From the NCBI RefSeq assembly GCF_006345805.1, contig NW_021831712.1, positions 1-39,796 on the forward strand: a stretch of 39,796 nt of DNA, read 5' to 3'. The translations under genes were made by a program, and so were the position numbers. A model generated the notes under the pieces. It worked only from the letters and a program-made list of their open reading frames with translations, was not told where the DNA came from and did no database searches. The stretch is from Octopus sinensis (lineage: Eukaryota). Below, in pieces: positions 9,942 to 35,880 of the stretch. Every line of letters starts with the position of its first letter. Within the stretch, counting starts at the first letter, position 1.

Positions 9942-10434
9942 GCTGTTTTTGTTCTTTCTCGTTGCTGCTGCTGTGGTTGTTGCTGTTAAGCAACAAGACG
10001 GGTAAGGGTGATTAGGTGATGGTCTAGGGCTTAGGGGCGGGAGACCCTAGACCTTGAGAAAAAAACACTTTGGTCGTCTTGTTGTAGACGAGGGTTCTTC
10101 GTTGACGCCCTACACCACTGAGAGGTGGCCCTAGAAGTCGCTAGAAATAGAGATCTCCAGGTCCAAATTCTGGAACAAAGGTAACCCCTTAGGTACACCA
10201 TTCGGAGTATTTGAGCAGTTCCAAGTAGTACTGTTTTCTGCAAGTGCTCCATCCTTATTGCATCCCCTATTTGTTCTATATATTTCTCAAGATTTTCACT
10301 CACTTTTCCCAGGTCTCCAACATTTATTGGTACTGCTACCATCTTTTTCAGCGACCACAACTGCTTAACCTCCCAAGCTAACCTGTCATATCTATTGACT
10401 TTTCTTTCTTCCTATATCTATGATCCAGTATCGC

Positions 10435-10436
<2 letters not shown>
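9942..10436 (-). mobile_element. 3' fragment of an R4/Dong-clade element (endonuclease homology ~10195-10436; the rest is non-homologous 3' sequence)
   Basis: LWSLKKMVAVPINVGDLGKVSENLEKYIEQIG..LQKTVLLGTAQILRMV; lies between (ATT)n 10437-10536 and (ATT)n(ATC)n 9830-9941. Confidence 0.85.
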
Positions 10437-10488
<52 letters not shown>

Positions 10489-10499
10489 TATTATTATTA

Positions 10500-10536
<37 letters not shown>

Positions 10537-11091
10537 GAGTGAGAGAGCAGTTCATGCCATCAAAGTGACACTGGGGTAAAATATACGAAGCCCAATATAC
10601 CCATCATGACTACCCGTCTGATAAGGGTACACCAGGCACATGCATCACAACCATATGTGCGCGACATGGTGATCTCATATCAAGATAAACAACACATGAC
10701 CTTGCAGGTGGGGCCCAGTTAGAATTTTCTTCAGGTTGAGTAGCCCATCCTGCTCAAACGGTCCCTGAATAAGGGTTGCTTTAGGATGTTGAACGAAACA
10801 CCTATGTTTCCAGAGGTGAACCATTCAAACTCCAAAGAATCCCTCTCAACACATGGCCATGATGCTCCCCCACTACTTCTGCTCGTGATCAGAGATGCAC
10901 ATATCGTCAGCCACTAAGGGACATGCTCAACTGGTTAAGGTCAAACAACTGACAAGCAAACCTGTGGTATGAGCAGAATATTTGCTGTAGCCCATCTTTT
11001 ATACCAAGACAAAACAATGTACATGATAACACTTCCAGTCAGTTAAGATCAGAAGCCATGAGAGCCACTGCCTGGTACTGCATCAGGGCAT
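10537..11091 (-). mobile_element. ~555-bp non-coding element flanked by (TAA)n, copy 1 (candidate non-autonomous R4/Dong partner)
   Basis: Precise boundaries against (ATT)n on both sides; a second near-identical copy at 25692-26205; no internal ORF of 60 aa or more in the track; pseudoknot-capable motif near its 3' end. Confidence 0.8.
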
Positions 11092-11118
11092 TTATTATTA
11101 TTATTATTATTATTATTA

Positions 11119-11164
<46 letters not shown>

Positions 11165-12236
11165 GCTGCTGCCGTCTGGTAGCAATAATAATAATAATAT
11201 CGCGCCGGACAAAGCACTTGGTGGCATTTCGTCCGACTTCACGTTCAAAGCTCAGATTGTGCAGAAGTTGCCTTAGTAAAAAAAAGAATTATTATTTTTG
11301 CAAACCTACTTTTTTCTAAACCGTAATAACACATAAAGCGCGACGGGCCACGATCGTGGCCGTCAGGCACAGGTTGACAGGCCACGATTGTAACTCAGGC
11401 ATTTAATTTATGGGCGCTTGTTGGGGTCTAATGTCACTCAAACTCTCCGATACCCCGCAGAATGCAAGAGGACTGATAGTTCAACTAATGACTTTTCAGA
11501 TTATGTAAAACTTGCCACCATTGTATACTAAGAAGATATTTTAACTATTTTTTTGTTTTTTATGTGTGCATGGTAGTCTCATTTGCATAAAATGTGCTCA
11601 GCTATGTAAGTGCAAATTCCAGCGCTTTATGGGTTAACCAACAATATATGCTATTTTCTTTTATAATGCAACAGGAGTTCATACGAGGCAGATAAAGCTA
11701 CTGTTTCTACCTGATCATGCGACGCCGCTTAAAGGCTCCTTCCCCGATTCGGTCCGGTAAATTCCAAAGCAGACAGAATTTCATCGCAAAAGGACAAACA
11801 AATAAAGATAATGTAATGAAGGACTCAAAGGGGTGACTCATCGCGACTCATCGCGTCTCATCGCGTCTCCTCCGTTCACACCATCTCCATCTCCTACCGC
11901 CACTCTTTATAATCTATCTATTCCTCCATCAAGCTATGTATCGCTTTCTCGACCTTTTATAATAGTAGTTTAGTTGTGGTGGAGCTAGTGGAAGTGGTGA
12001 TGGCTGTGGTAGCGATGGTTGTGGCAACGGTAGTTGTGACGCCGGCGTGGTTTTGGCGGCGGCGGCGACGGTAATGTCACTGGCAACAGATGCACTAGTA
12101 ACAATAGTAGTAGTAGCAGTAGTAAACGTAGTAGCATTAGTATTCTCTTTCTCTCTCTCTTCATCTCTCTTTCATCTTTCATACAACCTCCGCCTTCGAC
12201 TCAGTCATCATCCACTTCTTTCTCGCTCACACATCC

Positions 12237-15660: not shown

Positions 15661-15867
15661 GTGAGCTGGCAGAAACGTTAGCTCACCGGGAGAAACGCTT
15701 AGCGGTATTTCGTATATCTTTATATTTTGAGTTCAAATTCCGCCGAGATCGACTTTGCCTTTCATCCTTTCGGGGTCGATAAAATAAGTACCAGTTGCTT
15801 ACTGGGGGCGATGTAATCGACTGACCCCTCCCACAAAATTTCGGGCCTTGTGCTTAGAGTAGGAAAG
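15661..15867 (+). mobile_element. SINE family 2 (head GGCGGCGAGCTGGCAGAA..)
   Basis: gagctggcagaaacgttagc..gagttcaaattccgccgag..ttcggggtcgataaa..agtaccagtt. Confidence 0.9.
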
Positions 15868-16907
15868 ATTAACTTCAATTCTTCTCAGTAATGATTCGAA
15901 TGGTTCTTTTCCAGTTAAACTGATATCCGATTGGTCAAGAAAACTTCAAATGAGACTAGTAGCGATTTCTCTTCAAAATCGACAAAATTTGTCATCGTGG
16001 TGTTATCAAGTACCTACAGAGAAACGGTTTCGCCCCTCAGATGATTCACACTGAAACGGCTGCTACATTGGGGGATGGCGCTCCGGCTTTGTTAACAGTG
16101 CAAAAGTGAGCAGTTGAATTTAGGAAGGAAAGGGAGGGTCACGGAGTTGACCTGCGGCCTGGTCATCCTGCAGCAGCTACCACCGAGGAAAACATTGATC
16201 GTGTTACGTCTTCTCACACCTCGTCAAAGCGCACAAATCACGAGGAAATCTTACATTGTTTGAGGCAGATCCATTTGTTTTCCTTCTTGAACATATCAAT
16301 CCAGAATGACTATTGGATTCATCACTTTGACTCACAACCTCAACACCTTCTCCAAAGAAGGCAAGGTCGTTTCACGAGTAGGGAAGATGAAGGCCTCCGT
16401 TTTGGGTGATGCAAAAGGCATTGAATTTGACTCTCTTCAAAAGCGCCACACTATCAAGGGCCTCACTATCAACTTGCTAAGACAGAAACGAAAAGCTATC
16501 AAGAGCAAACGCCTAGGAAAAAAAGGACGGTGTTACCTCAGGATCATGCTCCAGCACACAAGCTCTTGATTTCGATGGCTGCAAGGGAGCACGAGTTTGG
16601 CTTTGAACTTTTGATCGACCCCTCCAATTCTCCTGATTTGCTCACATCTGAATATCATCTCTTCCCCAACATGAAAAACACTTGGCTGCGAACAAGTATC
16701 TCGGTGATGAATACGTCATATCTTCGTTGATGACATTTTTCGAGAAACAGGATAAAAGTCTCTTCACAAATTGGATTGAAATACTACAAAAGCAATGAAG
16801 GGAGTGTGTGGAACATAAGGGGAACTATGCTGAAAAATAAACCTCTTTCGGTCGCATTCCATGCGAGTATCTTCTTCAGCCTATGAACGTTTCAACCGAC
16901 CATCCTG
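15868..16907 (+). mobile_element. Decayed mariner transposon (probably irritans/Himar1-like) with internal deletions
   Basis: (ATC for ATG)-DKICHRGVIKYL..GDGAPALLTVQK*AVEFRK..RPGHPAAATTEENIDRV; QDHAPAHK; PSNSPDLLTSEYHLFPNMK; GNYAEK*; degenerate right TIR near 16877-16905. Confidence 0.8.
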
Positions 16908-18846: not shown

Positions 18847-19766
18847 CAGGCCTACCTCGGCTTAAGTCGTTTCGATTCAGTTGCTCTCGGTTATACGTCG
18901 GTTTTCAAAAATAATAAATGGGAAAATAAAGGCGGTGAGCAGGCAGAAACGTTAACACGCTGCGTGAAATGCTTAGCGGTATTTCGTTTGTCTTTACGTT
19001 CAGAGTTCAAATTCCGCCGAAGTTGTCGATAAATTAACTACCTGTTGCCTACTGGGGTCGATCTAATCAACTGGCCCCTTCCCCAAAAATTTCGGGCCTT
19101 TTGCCTAGAGTAGAAAAGAATGTATGGAAAAATGAAAATCAGGTTAAATCATTTCACTCGACTTTACGTCTCTCTGTCACAAATATTGGAATCGTAAAAT
19201 CAGTAGAAAACCGTTAGAAGTACATAAAATCATGTTACTCTCCAATAAATAGGAATAAAAGCATATAAAATGATATTAAAATACGTACACTAAATGTTAA
19301 GATACACACCATAAAGTAGTGTAGCTTAGTGAACCAAATTATGAAAACAAACGAAATCACCAAATTGTATGTCCATATTGGTAAATTTTAAATTATTTAG
19401 ATCTTTTAATATTGCGAAATAATAATAATTACTAAATTTGTTTTCTAAGCTTAAAAAAGGTTTTAATTTTACTATGTCTTATTGCAAGGTAAACACTGCC
19501 AAATTGTATTCGTAAATTTAGATTACTTTTTTTTACTGTACTGTATTAAAAAAAAAAATTATTTGTTTGCAAGCTTAAAATAGGTCTTTATTAACCATGT
19601 ATTATTGAAAATACATTCATAAATAAAGCACAGAACTGGGAATGGTTATTATCGGTTTAGCCTAGAGACAAGTAAATTCGGCCTAGCCTAGCCTAGAGAC
19701 AAGTTAATTCGACTTAAGTCGTGTCTCCTGTAACCAATTAACAACGTAGAGTGAAGTATGCCAGTG
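18847..19766. mobile_element. Degenerate Tigger/pogo-like non-autonomous DNA element with a nested SINE
   Basis: Left end TA-CAGGCCTACCTCGGCTTAAGTCG; right end reverse complement CACTGGCATACTTC...CGACTTAAGTCGAA; AT-rich interior with a degenerate ~135-bp tandem duplication (19380-19615). Confidence 0.45.
18929..19121 (+). mobile_element. SINE family 2
   Basis: Same head, B-box and body as 15661-15867. Confidence 0.9.
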
Positions 19767-24656: not shown

Positions 24657-25445
24657 GTCCATCTTACATTCTGTATATATACATAAATGCATACGTGCGT
24701 GAAAATGTATATATATATATATATATATACAACGGATACGCACACCACAGACATATTCATATGTAATATTTTCATATGTATACATACACACACATACATA
24801 AATACATACATACATATATTGATCTGTTTCCATCTAAAGCCATATCATTTTGTCAATCTCTCTCGGCTTCATCTGAGCTGAAAAGCTGAAAATTAAATCA
24901 AATTACAACCAAATATTTGAATATTTAGTAAACATAAACGCATTTACAAACAGACGTAGAGGCTACGCAACCATCCAGATGAAACTTGCCGATCTACTGA
25001 TACAGTTTGTAATTCTTCCATATATCAAACATCATCAGAACTTCTCTCACTCGCAGTCTCTGTGCGCGTGTACATATATATTATATATACATATATATAT
25101 ATATATTATATATATATTATATATATATATATATATTATATAATGTATGTATGTATGTATGTTGTATGTATGTATGTATGTATGCATGTATGTATATGTA
25201 TATATGTGTGCGTGCGTGTTTGTGTGTGTTGCATTGTCGATAATATCTAATCACGTGACATATTGATTAGGTCTGTTTATAAAGTTTTGCAAATATCAAA
25301 CGTAGATTATTAATAATGACTTTTATTTTTCTATAATTGGCCAGTATCATCATCACCATGCCCCCACAACCAACAACAACCTTCTCGCTCCCCTTCGTCC
25401 GCATCCTCCTTTTCTTCATCATCATCGTTATTAATTATTCTTATT

Positions 25446-25654
25446 AAGGCGGGGGAGCTGGCAGAATCGTTAGCATGCCGGACGAAATGCTTATGGGTAT
25501 GTCGTTCGTCGCTACGTTCTGAGTTGAAATCCCGCCGAGGTGGACTTTTTTCTTTGGGGCCGATAAATTAAGTACCAGTTGAATACTGGGGTCGATGTGA
25601 ACGACTGTCCACCTCCCTAGACAACCCAGGCCTTGCGTCTATAGTAGAAAGAAT
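25446..25654 (+). mobile_element. SINE family 2 with (ATT)n tail
   Basis: Same family; followed directly by (ATT)n. Confidence 0.88.
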
Positions 25655-25691
25655 TGTTATTATTATTTTTATTATTATTATTATTATTATT

Positions 25692-26205
25692 GAGTGAGAG
25701 AGCAGTTCATGCCATCAAAGTGACACTGGGGTAAAATATACGAAGCCCAATATACCCATCATGACTACCCGTCTGATAAAGGTCACCAGGCACATGCATC
25801 ACAACGATATGTGCGCGACATGGTGATCTCATATCAAGATAAACAACACATGACCTTGCAGGTGGGGCCCAGTTAGAATTTTCTTCAGGTTGAGTAGCCC
25901 ATCCTGCTCAAACGGTCCCTGAATAAGGGTTGCTTTAGGATGTTGAACGAACACCTATGTTTCCAGAGGTGAACCATTCAAACTCCAAAGAATCCCTCTC
26001 ACACATGGCCATGGCTCCCCCACTACTTCTGCTCGTGATCAGAGAGATGCAATATCGTCAGCCACTAAGGGACATGCTCAACTGGTTAAGGTCAAACAAC
26101 TGACAAGCAAACCGTGTATTGAGAAGAATATTTGCTGTAGCCCATCTTTTATACCAAGACAAACAATGTACCTGATAACACTTCCAGTCATTAAGATCAG
26201 AAGCG
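25692..26205 (-). mobile_element. Copy 2 of the TAA-flanked non-coding element, 5'-truncated by ~40 bp
   Basis: Same 3' junction (ctctcactc-AATAAT) as copy 1; differences are mostly 1-3 bp indels; (ATT)n on both sides. Confidence 0.8.
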
Positions 26206-26254
26206 ATTATTATATTATTATTATTATTATTATTATATTATTATTGTTGTTGTG

Positions 26255-26450
26255 AAGGCGGCAAGCTGGCAGATTCGTTAGCATGCTGGACGAAATACTT
26301 AGCGATGTTTTGTCTGCCGCGTCGTTCTTAGTTCAAATTCCTCCAAAGTCGACTTTGCCTTTCATCCTTTCGGGTTCGATAAAATAAGTACCAGTACACT
26401 GGGGTCGAACATCTCTCCCAAGCTGCCCTTGTAGCGAAACTTTGAAATAA
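26255..26450 (+). mobile_element. SINE family 2
   Basis: Same family; lies between ATT tracts. Confidence 0.88.
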
Positions 26451-26461
26451 TTATGACTATT

Positions 26462-26661
26462 AAAGGCAGCGAGCTGACAGAATGGTTAGCACGACAGGCA
26501 AAATGCTAACAGGCATTTCGTCCGTCTTTACGTTCTGAATTCATATTTCGCCGTAGTCGACTTTGTCTTTCATCCTTTCGGGGTCGATAAAATAAGTACC
26601 AGTTGAGAACTGGGGTCGATCTAATCGACTTAATCCCTTCCCTCTAATTTCAGTAGAAACG
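26462..26661 (+). mobile_element. SINE family 2 (tandem copy)
   Basis: Same family; followed by a short ATT tract. Confidence 0.88.
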
Positions 26662-26683
26662 ATTGTTATGATTATTATTATTT

Positions 26684-26968
26684 TGGTTTGGCTCAGATTT
26701 CGTCTTATTCCTGGCAGGAATTATGTGGATTACGGGTCACTACCTGTAACCTTAGGTTTCCACAGGTTTTCAGCTGGCTTTTAAGTGCTTAGGACCCTCC
26801 TGATAATCCTTGCTGCCTCTAAGAGACAAACTTTCTTCTGTAGGAGCTCTACCGGGCATTCTATTCTAATCTCCTCAGCCATTTATCTGTATCTTTGCTT
26901 ACAGTTACCAATGCACCCAATATCATAGGCACGATCTTTAACTGCTCGCATGCTCCAAATTCTTTCTA
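26684..26968 (-). mobile_element. 3' fragment of an R4/Dong-clade element
   Basis: With small frameshifts: ERIWSMRAV-KIVPMILGALVTVSKDTDKWL..ELLQK-VCLLEAARIIRRVLST*; 5' end abuts the giant (ATT)n array and 3' end runs into TAA repeats. Confidence 0.85.
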
Positions 26969-29101
<2,133 letters not shown>

Positions 29102-29707
29102 TCTATGTTTGACTTTTGCTTTATATTTGTACAAGTTGGCTCCAAGTCTCACCCAGAGACCTCAAGAGACAACAGGGTTGGAAGTTCATGTTGTTGTTAT
29201 GCCTAGTGTGCCATATATTTGGGGGGTGGGGATGTTGTACTAATGAATGTCTAAAAAAAAAAAAAAAATTTTTTTTTTTTTTTTTTTTTTAAACCGAAAA
29301 TTATGGTTGTTTTAAACCTTGAGGTTACATAGAGGAGTATTTTGCGTAGGATATGAGCAGTTCCCATGAGCACTATCTTTTGAACTTCTGCCATTTTTGG
29401 GTTTCCTGGTATCTGAGTTAGGTAGCTATCAGCCCCTTTTGCTATCATTCCAGGGCACCTATGACAACAGGTATTGTTTTAGTCTTCAGCTTCCACATTT
29501 TGCTGATTTCTATTTCAAGATCTTTATATTTGCTCAGTTTTTGGTAGGTCCTGACAGATACGTTTATATCGATTGGGACAGTCATATCAATGAGGAGGAC
29601 ATGTTCTTTGTTTGAAGTCTTTCAATATGATGTCTGGCCTATTTGCATCTATCTTCCTGTCAGTTGAATGGTGAAGTTCCAGAGGAGTGAGATGTGGTTC
29701 ATTTTCA

Positions 29708-29781: not shown

Positions 29782-29828
29782 CATCATTATCATTATCATT
29801 ATCGTTATTATTATTATTATTATTTATT

Positions 29829-30007
29829 GTCTTTGCGTAGCTTCTAATGCTGGAGATGTACTACGGTGCGAGATGTGCACTACCAGTGAACTAAGGCAAC
29901 ACTTCTTATTTTTCGAGCACTATCCAGAGTCTTCGAGCGGTTCCAAGCATTGCTGTTTTCTGAAAGTGCTACACCCTTATTGCAGCCCCTATTTGTTCCA
30001 TATACAT
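29829..30007 (-). mobile_element. Short 3' fragment of an R4/Dong-clade element
   Basis: YMEQIGAAIRV*HFQKTAMLGTARRLWIVLEK*, short 3' UTR, then (TAA)n; same subfamily as the fragment near 10200-10436. Confidence 0.85.
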
Positions 30008-30016
30008 AATGAAGAT

Positions 30017-30051
30017 TTAATAATAAAATAATAATAATAATAATAATAATA

Positions 30052-30098
<47 letters not shown>

Positions 30099-30117
30099 TA
30101 ATAATAATAATAATAAT
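30017..30117. repeat. (AAT)n tract in opposite polarity to the neighbouring (ATT)n tracts
   Basis: Directly visible. Confidence 0.95.
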
Positions 30118-30433
30118 GTTAGGTATTATGACTTCTCTTTTGTATTTGTCAGCTTCCTTAAAGACTGAAAACAATGTTTTGTTTTGTTAGTGTTTTGCGA
30201 CTATTTGTATTAGTTATCCTTGCTTCTGAAGTAGGTATTTTTGTAGTCCGAAGGTGTTTTTATTTTGTAATAGTTTTTCTAGCTGTAAAAGGCCCGTACC
30301 ACCTTCTATATGTTTTATATATAACCTATGTCAGATTTGGGTGGTGCATCCTAAATCTTGTAATTATTTTTCTTGTTTTCCAAGCAGAAAAGGAGTGGAG
30401 AGAGAGTGTCTTCCTGAGATATTCCTCTTCTAA
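30118..30433 (-). mobile_element. Inverted duplicate of 34465-34779 (R4/Dong fragment)
   Basis: Reverse complement matches 34465-34779 with about 5 substitutions and 2 one-base indels counted by eye, and has the same internal deletion junction. Confidence 0.93.
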
Positions 30434-30443
30434 TTATTATTAT

Positions 30444-30476
<33 letters not shown>

Positions 30477-30528
30477 ATTAATTATTATATTATTATTATT
30501 ATATTATTATCATCATTATTATTATTAT

Positions 30529-33500
30529 GTATCATTGTCATTTACTTTTAAACTGCATGTTTGATGCAATCACCTGCCGGGGCACACCCAGCGCCCAAGG
30601 GCAAGTGAAGGTTAAGAGTTGTTGAAATATAGCTGAAAGCTTGGGGAGGGGAAGTAGAGATATATCTCCATGTAATGCAAACACAAACATTTACATTGAT
30701 AGGATTTTTCTAAGGATGTGGGCAGTACTTGTTAGCACAATCTTTTGGATTTCCTTGAGATATGGTTTTCCAGTCTAGGTGTTTCTGACATCCCTTTTTT
30801 ATCATACCTAGGGCACCTACAATAACAGGAACAGTTTTTGTTTTAAGATTCCACATCCTCTGTATTTCGATTTCCAGGTCCTTATATTTACTAAGTTTGT
30901 CAAATTCCTTGACAGATACATTTTTATCAGTGGGGACGCTTACTTCTATTAGTCTGCAGGTATTTTCTTCCCTGTCTTTAACAATTATGCTGGTCGATAG
31001 CCTTGATCGTTCTGTCAGTGTTGACTGGAAAATCCCAGAGGATGGTGACATCTTTACCTTCAACAACTGGCTGAGGATGGTGTTCATACCAGTTAGCAAG
31101 AGTGTCGGATTTGTAGTGTTTACATATCTTCCAATGTATATACTGTCCTACCCTATCGTGGCGATTTTTGTATTCGTTTGGTGTCAGCACAGGACATCCC
31201 GAAACGAGATGGTCTATCGTTTCGTCAAATGTGTCGCAGAATCTGCATTTAGGGTCAGTACCGTTTCGGAGAACGTTAGCCTGGTAATTTCTGGTAAACA
31301 AGCTTTGATCTTGTGCTGCCATTATGAAACCTTCAGTCTCTGCTTTCAATCCAGAGCTCTTCAGCCACTGATGGGTTGTTGCTTGGTCTACATCAGCATT
31401 TTGGCTTCGGAGAATATATTGTCCATACAGGGGCTTCGGCTCCACCGCCTCTCAATTTGATTCTGCCCGTTCTTTTTTGCAGTCTGCTTGATTCGCTTTG
31501 CTTGCTTGGTAGCAGTGGTTTCCGCTCTTCATCTGTTCAAGGTTAATGTCTAGTTCCCTTTCGAACTTATAAGCTTCCTTGACAATAGAATGTAGCTTTT
31601 TGCTGCTTTCGTGTTCGTACACAAGTCGCAGCATCCAGTCCTTTGTACTAGATAGGTACCTGTTCATTCCTACAGTAGAGGTCTTATAGCACAGCTCTAA
31701 TTGCATCATTCCTCTCCCCCCGCTGCTTCTAGGTAGGTACAAGCGGTCTACATCTGCCTTAGGGTGGTGCATGCTCTTGGATGTCAGTAACTTTCTTGTC
31801 TTCCTGTCCAAGCGTTGGAGTTCCGTAAGGTTCCAGTTAATGATGTTAAAACTGTACTGGACTACTGGAAGTGCCAGGGTGTTAATGGCCTCAATGCAAT
31901 TTTTGGAGTTGAGTTCAGTCTTCAGTACAAGCCTTATTCTCCTATAGTATTCCTTTCTTATTTTTTCCTTCATAGTAGCATGATGTATACCATCTCCTTC
32001 GTTGATTCCTAGGTATTTGTAACTTGATGGTAGTGTCAATATCTAATTTAACAGAAGCTGTTTGCCTGAGCTTGCCTCTTACAAAAGTTGCTTTAGCACA
32101 CTTATCAAGGCCAAAATCCATTCCGATATCATTGCTAAACTCTTTAACAGTTGTTAGCAGCCCTTCTAGCTCTTGGTCATTCCTGGCAAACAGCTTTAGG
32201 TCGTCCATATAGAAAAGGTGGTTTATTAACTTACTAAAAACTTTGTACCCATATCTGGTACTATCCATTCGTTTGAGAGTGGGATCAGTGCCATGCAAAA
32301 AAGTAATGGAGAGAGGGAGTCACCTTGAAAGATGCCTCGTTTGATGTTGATGCTGTTGGACTGGCTCATCCCATTACTATGGCTTAGAAAGAGACGTGTG
32401 TTCCACATGGTCATGCTATTCTCTAAGAATTTTGAGACGACAGGAGAGATCTTGTATATCTCAAGGGCCTTGAGTATCCATTTATGTGGGACACTGTCAT
32501 ACGCTTTCCTGTAGTCTATCCATGCCATACTCAGGTTTTTGTTTTTGCTCCGGCAATTCTCTACAATCATTCTGTTTATGAGCAATTGGTCTTTGCACCC
32601 ATAAGAGTTTCTTTTACAACCTTTTTGAGCTTGTGGAAGGATAGAATTTTGTTCAAGGAAAGCGTACATTCTCTCCGTTATTATGGATGTGAGGATTTTG
32701 TAGGTGGTGTTGAGACATGTTATTGGCCGGTAATTCTTTGGGTTTTTGTGTCTTCGGTTTTAGGTAATAGGTAGGTGGTTCCTTCAGTCAGCCAAGCAGG
32801 TATTTGCTCTGGGTTCTGAATGACATCAGACAGAGATGCAGCGAGATGTTCGTGTACTTCTGTCAAACAATTCAGCCAGAAGTTAGGGATCCGATCCAGT
32901 CCTGGGGTTTTCCATTTATGAGCCTTCCTAAGGACACACCTTAGCTCCTCTATTCCTATTGCTTCCCCCATTTCTGTTCTTCAAGTTCATCCAGTCTCTC
33001 TTTCTCACGTTCTATCCAGTCAGCCTCAGCATTAAACTCTTTTTCGTTGCTCCATACCTTCTTCCAGAACTCCTCCACTTCCTCAATCTTAGGTGGATCT
33101 TCTATGTGTATTTTATTTTTGCCAATTTCCCTATAAAATTTCTTTGCATCTGTCTTAAAAAATTTATTTTGTCGATAAAATTTGTTTTCTTTTGTCATAC
33201 CTTCTAAGCCGTTGAGCTTTCAACTGTATCCGTTGTTGCAACAGTTCCTTAGTTACGGGAGGTTTATGAGATCTTTGATTTTTATTTTTTGCTTGATTTT
33301 TCTAGCTTTTCTCGGCTTAATATTCACTCCTCTAGCAAGCTCATCGAGAATTGAAACATCCGCCCGCAGAGATTCAATCTCTTTTTGTATCGCTACTTTC
33401 CACTTAGGAGGTTCATTGACATGCCTGGCCTTTTTCTTTGTCATCTTAATACCTAGTTGGGTAGTTACTACTTTAGCAGTGGAATAAATGAGATTATTTA

Positions 33501-34161
33501 AGGTTGTCAATCATTCCCCTTATTTCTTAAGATCTGTCCTAGGGCAACGTTATATGTCATGATTGTGTTGTTATTTCTTGTGCCATTTGAAAACTTTGGT
33601 AGTGGTTCTCTATTAACCATGTCAGTGAGCTCAATCTTGCCGAGCTCTTCATAATGTCCACTTTTGCTTCCATAATCTTTTCTCTATTATTCCACCAAAT
33701 TCTATGTCATATCTATTTTGGTTTTCTTGAGGAAGGTCTACGTTCTCCTCTTTTTTCAAATCTCTCGTCTTCGCTATTCTTTGTTTAACTTCCCCATTGG
33801 GAAGTTGATTTGCCGCTTGTACACTGGCTTCTGTGCTACTGTTACCTATTTCGTCTACATTGTTGCTGTTTTCTTTTGGTCTACCATGAGCTATTAGTGT
33901 CCTAATTTTGTCAATTTCAGTGTCAGTTAGTCTTTTGTTTTTAATTATATCTCTGCGTATATTACTTAATTTATTTGCGTCTATATATCTACGTACGTCA
34001 TTGCCTACTGAATTTCTCCATGAGATGTATGTTTGTACACTGAGGTTATTGTTTGGGTTTAGTTGGGCTGTATAAAAAGCTTTCAGCACATCTCTATAGT
34101 CCTCTCTGGTCCATTTTATACGTTTTGCTTTAGGTGGTGTTTTTGGTGGTGTCACTACAAG
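30529..34161 (-). mobile_element. Near-full-length R4/Dong-clade non-LTR retrotransposon (RT + CCHC knuckle + restriction-like endonuclease); 5' UTR and start codon missing; ORF broken by about 8-10 small frameshifts
   Basis: Consecutive minus-strand ORF pieces give: N-terminal KWTREDY..W..KLSNIRRDII; RT motifs QKGCKRNSYGCKDQLL, AWIDYRKAYDSVPH, RGIFQGDSLSPLLF, YMDD, GMDFGLDKC, YKYLGI; CRFC..ETIDHLVSGC knuckle; RHD; WDFPVNTDR..IEVSVP..KLSKYKDL endonuclease. Stop at 30691-30693 (HILRKILSM*), ~160-bp 3' UTR, (TAA)n on both sides. Confidence 0.95.
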
Positions 34162-34210
34162 TTATTATTATTATTATTATCATCATTATTATCATTATTA
34201 TTATTATTAT

Positions 34211-34371
34211 TACTATTTTTTTTTCTTTTTCAAATTTGCTTCCATTTCTTGCCGAGTGTCTTCCCGACCCCTAGGACAAAGAACCCAATGTATACTATGA
34301 GTTTCTTTGCCCTAGGGGTCGGGAAGGACACTCGGCAAGAAATGGAAGCAAATTTGAAAGAAGAAAAAAAA

Positions 34372-34377
<6 letters not shown>
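34211..34377. repeat. Near-perfect palindrome (arms ~82-85 bp, centre GTA|TAC at 34292/34293); each arm resembles an R4/Dong 3' end running into (TAA)n
   Basis: caaatttgcttccatttcttgccgagtgtc... versus ...gacactcggcaagaaatggaagcaaatttg; both arms lead outward into TAA repeats. Confidence 0.9.
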
Positions 34378-34408
<31 letters not shown>

Positions 34409-34410
34409 TG

Positions 34411-34464
<54 letters not shown>

Positions 34465-34466
<2 letters not shown>

Positions 34467-35706
34467 TAGAAGAGGAATATCTCAGGAAGACACTCTCTCT
34501 CCACTCCTTTTCTGCTTGGAAAACAAGAAAAATAATTACAAGATTTAGGATGCACCACCCAAATCTGACATAGGTTATATATACAACATATAGAAGGTGG
34601 TACAGGCCTTTTACAGCTAGAAAACTATTACAAAATAAAACACCTTCGGACTACAAAAATACCTACTTCAGAAGCAAGGATAACTAAAACAAATAGTCGC
34701 AAAACACTAACAAAACAAAACATTGTTTTCAGTCTTTAAGGAAGCTGACAAATACAAAAGAGAAGTCATAGTATCTAACAACTATGAAGAAAAAGAAGAA
34801 ACAACAAAAGCTGTAAAACAACTGAAATACAAACTAAAACCGAAAGAGCAACGGATCGTGATAACACTGTGGCAAGCAAAGCCCCTTTATGGCAAATACT
34901 GGGTTAAACTAAACGCAAAAGAAATACACAAAGCAAAATCCCAACAAGGGCCGAGAAGCTCAGGACTCAAAGCAGAGAATAAAGGATTTTTAATTGCAGC
35001 ACAAGACCAAAGCCTCTCTACCAGAAATTACCAAAACCATTTAATGAAAAGAAATACAATATATGGGGTGGGACAAGAAGCAATAAATCATATTGTCTGG
35101 CTGTCTAGTCCTGGCTAAGAAGGAATATATTCACAGATACGACAGAGTTGGGATCTACATACACTGGAATCTATGCCAAGACTATGGAATAACAACAGAA
35201 AACAGATGGTATAGGCACACACCAGAAAAGATCACAAAAAAATGAGAAAGCAACCATACTATGGGATATGCCAATACACACAGATAGAGAAATTAAGGCC
35301 AATAGACCAGATATAGCTGTCCGAGATCATCAAGAAAATTGCTTTCTAATTGATGTATCAATACCAAACGATGACAATGTTTCTCTAAAAGTAATGGAGA
35401 AACTTTCAAAATACAAAGATAACTCGAATGTGGAACCTAAAAGCAGAAACAGTTTCTATTATAATAGGCGCATTACGTATGACAAAAATATATTCAGACA
35501 AATACATAACAGAAACACCAGGACTAACAAAAATATATAATATACAGAAAATAGTATTACTAGGCACCGCACACATACTAAGTAAAACACTTTCAATACA
35601 ATAACAATAAGAGGACCAACAATAAACCACAGCACGTACCCAAGTTACACAGAGCTGCGCTCGGTAATGCAGTGAAAACACGTGATAAAAATAAGACTAC
35701 TGAATG
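34465..35706 (+). mobile_element. 5'-truncated, internally deleted R4/Dong-clade copy of another subfamily
   Basis: Starts RRGISQEDTLSPLLFCL and jumps to the HHPKSD region; then SSGLKAENKGFLIAAQDQSL, DREIKANRPDI..LIDVSIP..KLSKYKD, LLGTAHILSKTLSIQ*; preceded and followed by (AAT)n. Confidence 0.92.
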
Positions 35707-35754
35707 ATAATAATAATAACAATAATGGTTTAAAATTTTGGCACAAAGCTATCA

Positions 35755-35880
35755 ATTCCGAGGAAGGAGTTAAGTTGATCACATGGATACTAGTGTTTAA
35801 CTGGTACTTATTTTATCGACCCCGTAAAGGATGAAAGGCAACGTCGACCACGGTGGTATTTAAACTCAGAATGTAGAAGT
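35755..35880 (-). mobile_element. SINE family 2 fragment
   Basis: actggtacttattttatcgacccc..ggatgaaaggcaacgtcgacc is the reverse complement of the family body. Confidence 0.8.

What the first reader, a model, noticed from the sequence alone, without database searches (positions are those of the whole stretch)
10537..11091. 555-bp non-coding element that behaves like a non-autonomous partner of TAA-targeting R4/Dong retrotransposons
Seen: two near-identical copies (10537-11091 and 25692-26205) sit cleanly inside (ATT)n tracts. They share the same 3' junction and have the same polarity as every R4 copy here (sense strand ends in AATAAT). Copy 2 is 5'-truncated, as expected for target-primed reverse transcription. 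There is no ORF and no clear tRNA B-box, so it is unlike the other SINEs in the window. About 65 nt from its 3' end it carries UACCC-UU-AUCAGAC-GGGUA-GUCAUGAU, the same pseudoknot architecture as the R4 3' UTRs. Known: Dong-type R4 elements target TAA repeats. Inference: this is a sequence-specific, microsatellite-targeted non-autonomous retroelement that borrows the R4 endonuclease/RT by structural mimicry rather than sequence identity. I cannot tell whether it is already catalogued.
Basis: partly seen in the sequence, partly recalled or inferred. Interest (0 to 1): 0.8.

Follow-up and report, generated by a model that had tools for sequence, protein, structure and literature searches.

The report
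TAA-repeat-homing non-coding octopus retroelement
This is a real 555-base, protein-less mobile element of octopus genomes that always lands in TAA-type simple repeats in one orientation, as the neighbouring Dong/R4-type jumping genes do, and probably borrows their enzymes, but the proposed "structural mimicry" of their tails is not supported.

Summary
Copies at 10537-11091 and 25692-26205 are 96-98% identical, lie inside (ATT)n tracts and contain no ORF or tRNA-like head. The minus strand is the sense strand.

I recovered six more copies from three Octopus bimaculoides loci. That gives 7 DNA copies with a 3' end, plus one internal fragment. All 7 end ...CTCTC(A/G)CTC or ...CTCTCTCA and are followed directly by (AAT)n of at least 6 units. 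Three independent full-length copies start at the same ATGCCCTGATG. Four are 5'-truncated, at about nt 35, 338, 409 and 510. None runs upstream into an ORF. Several sit in the (ATT)n tails of tRNA-like SINEs.

All five R2-superfamily LINE copies in the window (reverse transcriptase, CCHC zinc knuckle, restriction-like endonuclease) lie in TAA arrays with the same polarity. So this is a discrete, non-autonomous retroposon aimed at TAA microsatellites, most likely moved by Dong/R4-type LINEs.

Not supported:
- It shares no sequence with the four LINE lineages sampled.
The region folds better as a 48-nt hairpin.
- I found no HDV-like 5' ribozyme.

The partner and the recognition signal remain inferred. 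Verdict: new variant of a known kind, moderate interest.

The parts
10537..11091 (-). Copy 1, full length (555 nt). Sense strand begins ATGCCCTGATG and ends CTCTCTCACTC. It is 0.9% from the 7-copy consensus.
25692..26205 (-). Copy 2, 5'-truncated by ~35 nt, with the same 3' junction. It is inserted antisense into the (ATT)n tail of the SINE at 25428-25652.
10437..10536 (-). (AAT)33 directly 3' of copy 1 on the sense strand. This is the target array and the presumed priming side.
11092..11164 (-). (AAT)24 directly 5' of copy 1 on the sense strand.
25653..25691 (-). (AAT)13 directly 3' of copy 2. It is the proximal part of the SINE's (ATT)n tail.
26206..26245 (-). (AAT)~13 directly 5' of copy 2. 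It is the distal part of the split SINE tail, followed by the next SINE head.
10590..10637 (-). 48-nt hairpin 45-95 nt from the 3' end. It still forms in the three copies I folded, though less stably in copy 2.
9942..10436 (-). R4_D: 5'-truncated REL-endonuclease LINE (C-terminal ~67 codons plus ~250-nt 3' UTR). It lies next in the same array as copy 1, in the same polarity.
30529..34161 (-). R4_A: decayed LINE with RT, CCHC knuckle and PD..D..K endonuclease, flanked by TAA arrays. A candidate type of autonomous partner.
29100..29707 (-). R4_B: 5'-truncated copy of another lineage, with (AAT)n downstream.
34467..35705 (+). R4_C: 5'-truncated copy of a third lineage. Its 3' end lies in the (ATT)n tail of an antisense SINE.
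29825..30017 (-). R4_D-like 3' fragment, with (AAT)n downstream.

Best explanation
The element is a family of 555-nt, ORF-less non-LTR retroposons of Octopus. It is copied by target-primed reverse transcription into (TAA)n microsatellites, very often the (ATT)n tails of abundant tRNA-like SINEs.

Proposed cycle:
1. A full-length copy is transcribed from its sense strand (minus strand in the window), and the transcript reads through into the downstream (UAA)n.
2. A Dong/R4-type LINE protein (RT + CCHC + restriction-like endonuclease) nicks the TTA strand of a TAA array.
3. The freed (ATT)n 3'-OH anneals to the (UAA)n end of the RNA and primes cDNA synthesis. This always recreates the junction ...CTCTCTCACTC|(AAT)n.
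4. Synthesis either reaches nucleotide 1 (ATGCCC...) or stops early, giving 5'-truncated copies joined by microhomology.

Shown: discrete ends, fixed 3' junction, variable 5' truncation, fixed polarity, target, absence of coding capacity, co-residence with REL-endonuclease LINEs of the same polarity, and a range of copy ages.

Inferred: trans-mobilisation by R4/Dong proteins, the priming geometry and the read-through tail. The recognition signal is unknown. It is not a shared 3' tail with any sampled lineage. The best candidates are the (UAA)n tail and the conserved 48-nt hairpin.
For: Same 3' junction in 7 of 7 DNA copies with a 3' end, each followed by at least 6 AAT units: window x2, L001 70546-71101, L004 17341-17896, L004 9748-9966, L004 19360-19411, L005 5016-5163. 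An eighth junction is visible in peptide P0002, 'LLLLLSERAVHA'.

TAA-type arrays are only 0.3-0.45% of the O. bimaculoides loci sampled.

Three full-length copies at unrelated loci, 9-10% diverged, start at the same nucleotide after (A)ATAATAA(T). Four truncations lie at different points.

There is no ORF. A six-frame search of 5.8 billion proteins returned only three octopus gene models that exonise the element, and no RT.

Copies w2, L004b and L005a lie between an antisense SINE body plus its tail and the next sequence. The array was therefore a pre-existing SINE tail.

Divergence from consensus ranges 0.9-13%, with a 21% fragment, which points to long-lasting activity.

Sense-strand RNA folds better than shuffles in two copies 11% apart (z = -2.64 and -2.65, 0 of 100 shuffles). 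The antisense strand does not (-0.46, -1.26).

All five LINE copies in the window are in TAA arrays with the same polarity. Their ORF has RVT_1 and its best solved relatives are R2 proteins.

Bombyx Dong has (TAA)n upstream on its sense strand. Dong-R4 LINEs are reported as numerous and recently active in O. vulgaris.
Against: No sequence similarity to any of the four LINE lineages in the window or to L002, at either end (blastn word 7, nhmmer --max). The LINE tails are A-rich (AAAAGTAAATGACA-like) whereas the element's tail is CT-rich.

No HDV-like ribozyme at the 5' end, although Dong, R4 and R2 SIDEs use one (PMC3774820).

No promoter was identified.

Only ~250 kb of octopus DNA could be sampled. 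Two of the loci were found through the element itself, so copy number and the completeness of the partner search are unknown.

No clean empty site was obtained.
Confidence: 0.7

Rival explanations
1. The copies are 5'-truncated 3' ends (a long 3' UTR) of an autonomous Dong/R4 lineage that was not sampled. There would then be no separate non-autonomous element.
For: 5'-truncated LINE copies are the rule in this window. Only about 250 kb of octopus DNA was searched. Four of seven element copies are themselves truncated.
Against: Three copies at unrelated loci begin at exactly the same nucleotide and are preceded directly by TAA units and then unique DNA. No copy extends further 5'. No frame shows any RT or endonuclease remnant in a search of 5.8 billion proteins that holds more than 800 relatives of these LINEs.
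Confidence: 0.08
2. It is a family of retro-copies of a structured host non-coding RNA gene, made as a by-product of the TAA-specific LINE machinery. It would not be a self-propagating element, because only the master gene is transcribed.
For: No LINE-derived tail, no recognisable internal promoter and no ribozyme. The sense strand folds significantly better than shuffles. G+C is well above background.
Against: No Rfam family matches. Copies range from ~1% to ~13% divergence, and L004b and L005a share a variant (TATAATGGG), which suggests successive source copies. Every copy ends at the same nucleotive next to (AAT)n, so the source RNA itself must carry a TAA tail, i.e. it lies in a TAA array like its progeny. 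In practice this rival differs from the main reading only in the number of active source loci.
Confidence: 0.12
3. It is mobilised by a different LINE class that carries a (TAA)n-type tail (for example an RTE- or I-like element). TAA targeting would then come from tail-to-target annealing, not from a Dong/R4 endonuclease.
For: Upstream TAA is short or absent in four of seven copies (3, 3, ~0 and 0 units) while downstream (AAT)n is universal. That pattern needs only annealing on the priming side. No tail is shared with the R4-like lineages. RTE elements are abundant in octopus.
Against: In all DNA sampled, the only LINEs seen in TAA arrays with this polarity are the REL-endonuclease ones. The abundant SINEs carry the opposite-polarity (ATT)n tail, so their partner would give the wrong orientation.
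Confidence: 0.08
4. It is not a retroelement: the copies arose by segmental duplication or as a DNA transposon.
For: The two window copies are only 15 kb apart.
Against: Sequences beyond the arrays are unrelated. Copies occur on two other chromosomes of O. bimaculoides. There are no terminal inverted repeats. Truncation is one-sided with a fixed opposite end.
Confidence: 0.02

Closest known systems
R2 SIDEs (short internally deleted elements) of Drosophila (Eickbush & Eickbush 2012; summarised in PMC3774820)
   Same: ORF-less, a few hundred nt long. They parasitise a site-specific REL-endonuclease LINE and insert at that LINE's target in the same orientation.
   Different: SIDEs keep the R2 5' HDV-like ribozyme and a 3' UTR identical to R2. 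Here no ribozyme was detected and no similarity to any sampled LINE at either end. The target is a dispersed microsatellite, not the 28S rRNA gene.
EhSINE1 / EhLINE1 of Entamoeba histolytica (PMC2996970). That EhLINEs belong to the R4 clade is my own recollection, not checked here.
   Same: A non-coding partner of ~550 nt for a LINE with a restriction-enzyme-like endonuclease. It lacks a tRNA/7SL-derived head, so it is not a SINE by the strict definition.
   Different: EhSINE1 shares ~70 bp of 3' end with its LINE and is not microsatellite-specific. The octopus element shows no shared tail but has strict (TAA)n polarity.
Dong of Bombyx mori and the R4 clade (Xiong & Eickbush 1993; Burke et al. 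1995; cited in PMC3774820)
   Same: (TAA)n target with the TAA strand as the sense strand. Co-resident octopus LINEs have the RT-CCHC-PD..D..K order.
   Different: Dong is autonomous (~5 kb, one ORF) and starts with a self-cleaving HDV-like ribozyme. The element has neither.
SINEU with Tx1-Mar LINEs in crocodilians (Kojima 2015, PMC4494074)
   Same: A short non-autonomous element whose insertion sites follow the target preference of a sequence-specific LINE. Transcription may depend on flanking sequence.
   Different: SINEU has an snRNA-derived head, and its partner has an APE-type, not REL-type, endonuclease. Its targets are a DNA transposon, not (TAA)n.
Classical tRNA-derived SINEs with LINE-derived 3' tails (Okada/Ohshima model)
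   Same: Moved in trans by TPRT, 5'-truncated copies occur, high copy number is possible.
   Different: No Pol III head and no LINE-derived tail found.

Membership tests
Non-autonomous non-LTR retroposon (TPRT product) | Fixed 3' end with variable 5' truncation | tested here: met
   7 of 7 copies share the 3' junction. Starts are at nt 1 (three copies) and at about 35, 338, 409 and 510.
Non-autonomous non-LTR retroposon (TPRT product) | No coding capacity; a discrete unit not continuous with a LINE ORF | tested here: met
   The longest stop-free stretch is 60 codons. The protein search returned no RT. Three full-length copies are flanked upstream by TAA units or unique DNA.
Non-autonomous non-LTR retroposon (TPRT product) | Insertion demonstrated by an empty orthologous or allelic site | tested here: inconclusive
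   The orthologous intron in another cephalopod (L003) lacks the element but is too diverged to align across the site. O. vulgaris and O. sinensis loci could not be fetched. Indirect evidence: SINE tails are split by the element, while intact SINE tails occur elsewhere.
Partner of Dong/R4-type (TAA)n-specific LINEs | Inserts in (TAA)n with the TAA strand as sense strand | tested here: met
   7 of 7 copies are followed by (AAT)n of at least 6 units. This is the same polarity as 5 of 5 LINE copies in the window and as Bombyx Dong.
Partner of Dong/R4-type (TAA)n-specific LINEs | Shares a 3' tail (sequence or structure) with its autonomous partner | tested here: not met
   No similarity to R4_A-D or L002. 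Tail composition differs, and no shared pseudoknot was found. Only 4-5 lineages were sampled, so a matching lineage elsewhere in the genome is not excluded.
Partner of Dong/R4-type (TAA)n-specific LINEs | Mobilised by the LINE's protein | not testable with these tools
   Needs TPRT or retrotransposition assays.
SIDE-type derivative (internally deleted LINE) | 5' HDV-like self-cleaving ribozyme | tested here: not met
   Rfam at E<=10 gives nothing. My structural descriptor finds the CPEB3 control but nothing in copy 1. Relaxed hits are no better than shuffles, 49-86% of which score. A non-canonical ribozyme cannot be excluded.
SIDE-type derivative (internally deleted LINE) | Both ends identical to the parent LINE's UTRs | tested here: inconclusive
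   No match to sampled LINE 3' UTRs. No full-length octopus LINE 5' UTR was available.
SINE in the strict sense | Head derived from tRNA, 7SL, 5S or snRNA with a Pol III promoter | tested here: not met
   ARAGORN gives none and Rfam gives none. By eye there are only 5-nt A-box-like and B-box-like matches, about 270 nt apart.
R4/Dong clade (for the co-resident LINEs) | RT followed by a CCHC knuckle and a PD..(D/E)..K endonuclease; phylogenetic placement in R4 | tested here: inconclusive
   Domain order is seen. RVT_1 scores 1.9e-30. R2 proteins are the best PDB matches. The TAA target matches Dong. No phylogeny with reference R4/Dong/Rex6 sequences was run. The literature labels abundant octopus LINEs 'Dong-R4'.

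The most novel reading that the evidence does not exclude
Dong/R4-type reverse transcriptases may choose their template mainly through base-pairing between a (UAA)n RNA end and the nicked (TTA)n primer, not through a lineage-specific 3' UTR fold. The 555-nt element would then be a dedicated parasite of this relaxed mode. It carries no LINE-derived sequence at all, regenerates its own (AAT)n tail at each insertion, and uses the hundreds of thousands of SINE (ATT)n tails in octopus genomes as landing pads. That would make it a three-tier system: SINE tail, then LINE target, then hyper-parasite.
Probability: 0.3. Interest if true: 0.6.

Novelty: new variant of a known kind. Interest (0 to 1): 0.45.

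Why it matters
Site-specific REL-endonuclease LINEs (R2 and its relatives) are being developed as tools for targeted gene insertion, and what their reverse transcriptases accept as a template is a practical question. A natural, abundant, ORF-less RNA that reaches the same (TAA)n targets, in the same orientation, without any detectable LINE-derived tail or 5' ribozyme would be a ready-made test substrate for minimal template requirements in the Dong/R4 branch.

For octopus genomics it gives a class and a mechanism to a repeat that is probably filed as 'unknown' or 'unclassified SINE'. It shows that SINE tails act as landing pads for a second layer of retroelements. It also flags mis-annotated exons in at least three O. 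bimaculoides gene models.

If the genome-wide census instead finds a matching LINE tail, the element is an ordinary LINE/partner pair.

Tried and rejected
1. Rfam (gathering on the whole window; E<=10 on 10400-11200) and ARAGORN found no family and no tRNA.

2. HDV-like ribozyme at the 5' end. My own nested double-pseudoknot descriptor was validated on the CPEB3 host ribozyme. It gave no hit in copy 1. Relaxed hits were AU/GU-rich, sat at different positions in different copies, and were matched by 49-86% of shuffles.

3. It passes only in copy 1, appears in none of the LINE tails, and 12% of shuffles pass. A hairpin explains the region better.

4. Covariation. The 3-sequence consensus fold shows only 2 compensatory pairs and many wobble-compatible transitions, so it is uninformative.

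5. A 9-nt resemblance between the element's last bases (GAACTGCTC) and the conserved LINE C-terminal codons (..GTAHIL..). About 20 such 9-mers are expected by chance, so I dropped it.

6. Exact-pattern scans of the metagenome, prokaryotic-genome and viral collections with two conserved 21-22-mers gave 0 hits.

7. Orthologous empty site. The O. vulgaris and O. sinensis gene ranges exceed 100 kb, so no DNA was returned. Shorter isoforms are not on record. The locus from another cephalopod is too diverged.

8. Looking up a window ORF to identify the source assembly: not on record.

9. L001 35636-36200, a 565-bp stretch between two TAA arrays, turned out to be ordinary sequence between SINE tails.

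10. Literature. Five full-text searches gave no description of a Dong/R4 non-autonomous partner. That is not proof of absence, and Repbase and Dfam could not be queried.

Full report
**1. The observation**

The region 10537-11091 and a second copy at 25692-26205/7 are the only matches to each other in the window. They are 96.4% identical with gaps and 97.7% without.

Both are embedded in TAA-type arrays on both sides. On the minus strand both end ...GGCATGAACTGCTCTCTCACTC, followed at once by AATAAT... Copy 1 begins ATGCCCTGATG directly after ...AATAATAA. Copy 2 lacks the first ~35 nt.

No frame has a stop-free stretch longer than 60 codons. G+C is 45.8% against 34.2% for the window. ARAGORN finds no tRNA-like gene and Rfam finds nothing, even at E<=10.

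**2. The organism and more copies**

The collections hold no searchable octopus genome, so I used an indirect route. I translated all stop-free stretches of the element in six frames and searched them as one protein query.

The only hits among 5.8 billion proteins were three Octopus bimaculoides gene models that had taken a piece of the element as an exon (P0001-P0003). No reverse transcriptase was hit, although the database holds more than 800 relatives of the local LINE ORF.

The loci behind these models, and one neighbouring gene, gave about 155 kb of O. bimaculoides DNA (L001, L004, L005). They contain:
- L001 70546-71101: full length, 10% from consensus.
- L004 17341-17896: full length, 9%.
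- L004 9748-9966: starts at about nt 338.
- L004 19360-19411: starts at about nt 510.
- L005 5016-5163: starts at about nt 409.
- L004 28383-28577: an old internal fragment, 21% diverged, with no TAA flanks.

**3. The pattern across copies**

- All seven DNA copies that keep a 3' end finish ...CTCTC(A/G)CTC (one ends ...CTCTCTCA) and are followed by at least six AAT units. An eighth junction is readable in peptide P0002.
- TAA-type arrays cover only 0.3-0.45% of the O. bimaculoides loci. Seven out of seven in one polarity is far beyond chance.
- Three full-length copies at unrelated loci start at the same nucleotide. Each is preceded by two or three TAA units or a long array, and then by unique DNA.
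- The four truncations are all at different points.
- No copy continues upstream into coding sequence.
- Divergence from the consensus runs from 0.9% (copy 1) to 13%, so the family has been active for a long time and probably recently.

**4. The target**

The window and the loci carry many tRNA-like SINEs whose own sense strand ends in (ATT)n. Three element copies sit in such tails, antisense to the SINE, with the SINE body directly beyond the (AAT)n: copy 2, the L004 9748-9966 copy and the L005 copy. So does one LINE copy, R4_C. The downstream array is therefore pre-existing target, not only a tail brought in by the element.

Upstream TAA is variable: 24, 13, 3, 3, ~0 and 0 units, and none at all before the L005 copy. 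Downstream (AAT)n is universal. That fits a nick on the TTA/ATT strand anywhere in the array, with the array 3'-OH serving as primer.

**5. The neighbours**

- 30529-34161(-) is a decayed LINE. It has RVT_1 (1.9e-30), a CX2CX12HX4C knuckle and an RPD...D...K endonuclease motif after the RT. Its closest solved relatives are R2 proteins.
- Further 5'-truncated copies of three other lineages lie at 29100-29707(-), 34467-35705(+) and 9942-10436(-).
- A fragment lies at 29825-30017(-).

Every one has its sense strand followed by (AAT)n. Bombyx Dong has the same polarity (primer design quoted in PMC3774820). 'Dong-R4' LINEs are reported as abundant and recently active in octopus, with 5 families and 1129 young insertions in O. 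vulgaris (PMC13282606).

I did not run a phylogeny. 'R4/Dong-type' therefore rests on domain order, target and the literature label.

**6. What is not supported**

*No shared sequence.* The element shares no detectable sequence with any of these LINE lineages or with the related metagenomic scaffold L002. The LINE tails are A-rich and partly alike (AAAAGTAAATGACA / AAAAGTCAAACA / AAAAGGAATGGACA). The element's tail is CT-rich.

*The pseudoknot.*
- It passes a formal H-type test only in copy 1.
- It fails in copy 2 and in the L001 copy.
- It is absent from all six LINE tails, apart from a trivial A/T run.
- About 12% of shuffles produce one.
- The supposed stem strand GGGUA is the most variable spot among copies (GGGTA, GAGTA, GGATA, GTGTA).

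In the minimum-energy fold GGGUA is the apical loop of a 48-nt hairpin.

*No 5' ribozyme.* Dong, R4 and the R2 SIDEs define their 5' ends with an HDV-like ribozyme (PMC3774820). A structural descriptor that recovers the CPEB3 control finds nothing credible at the element's 5' end. Rfam agrees.

**7. RNA structure**

The sense strand folds better than dinucleotide shuffles in two copies 11% apart (z = -2.64 and -2.65, 0 of 100 shuffles). The antisense strand does not (-0.46 and -1.26). This supports the strand assignment and suggests a structured RNA. With so few sequences, covariation is uninformative: only 2 compensatory pairs.

**8. Interpretation**

The best reading is a discrete, ORF-less, (TAA)n-homing non-LTR retroposon copied by TPRT. 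It is most likely moved in trans by the Dong/R4-type LINEs that share its arrays and polarity.

How the protein picks this RNA is open. It is not through a tail shared with any lineage sampled. A read-through (UAA)n end that anneals to the nicked array, perhaps helped by the hairpin, is the simplest proposal.

Rivals, each argued in its own section:
- Truncated 3' UTR of an unsampled LINE (0.08).
- Retro-copies of a host RNA gene (0.12).
- A different LINE class with a TAA tail (0.08).
- Non-retro duplication (0.02).

**9. Comparison with known systems**

It works like R2 SIDEs and like the EhSINE1/EhLINE1 pair (PMC2996970). Those are short non-coding riders on REL-endonuclease LINEs. It fails the defining features of both (ribozyme plus LINE UTRs; shared 70-bp tail), and it fails the strict SINE definition because it has no Pol III head.

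Five full-text searches found no description of a non-autonomous partner of Dong/R4. Repbase and Dfam could not be queried, and the family may already sit in octopus repeat libraries as unclassified.

I rate it a new variant of a known kind, with moderate interest.

**10. Limits**

- Only about 250 kb of cephalopod DNA was sampled.
- Two loci were ascertained through the element itself.
- I obtained no clean empty site, no expression data and no full-length octopus LINE 5' end.
- The density seen (4-5 non-ascertained copies in ~155 kb) hints at a high copy number, but it is not a valid estimate.

Noticed in passing
window 26967-29099: A 2.1-kb (TAT)n array (725 units, 88% matches) with ATC/GTT variants. 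It directly adjoins the 3' end of R4_B and is unusually long for a trinucleotide repeat.
   Followed up: no
window 30117-30526 vs 34371-34780; 34162-34426: A 96% inverted duplication made of the 5' part of R4_C plus its TAA array. It brackets R4_A, and next to it is a perfect ~265-bp fold-back centred near 34294. It could be a 5' inversion or hairpin made during LINE integration, or an assembly artefact.
   Followed up: partly
window 9942-10436, 29100-29707, 29825-30017, 30529-34161, 34467-35705: At least four distinct lineages of REL-endonuclease LINEs are nested in TAA arrays within 40 kb. The TAA arrays act as a shared graveyard and landing zone.
   Followed up: partly
R4_A C-terminal domain (window 30713-31451): Its closest database relatives are 65-83% identical and come from shrimp, hydrozoan, coral and starfish genomes and from metagenomes. 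That is very high conservation across phyla for a LINE domain, which raises the question of horizontal transfer.
   Followed up: no
window 15661-15868, 18926-19121, 25428-25652, 26250-26408, 26448-26690, 35687-35876; also L001, L004, L005: tRNA-like SINEs end in (ATT)n on their own sense strand. That is the opposite polarity to the LINEs and to the element, which insert antisense into these tails. The SINEs must depend on a different LINE.
   Followed up: partly
window 29255-29292: An A22T16 run sits inside the 3' UTR of R4_B. It is self-complementary and of unknown origin.
   Followed up: no
P0001, P0002, P0003 (O. bimaculoides gene models); L001 70546-71147: Pieces of the element, and even the (AAT)n array read as poly-Asn, are annotated as coding exons of a PP2A B55 subunit, a cGMP-dependent kinase and a sushi-domain protein. 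These are likely annotation artefacts or exonisation events.
   Followed up: partly
window 25692-26205: Copy 2 differs from copy 1 mainly by single-base deletions (about 12 gap columns beyond the 5' truncation, against 12-19 substitutions). This looks more like long-read assembly indel error than evolution.
   Followed up: no
L004 28383-28577: An internal fragment of the element (nt ~100-270, 21% diverged) without TAA flanks. It is the oldest trace of the family seen.
   Followed up: no
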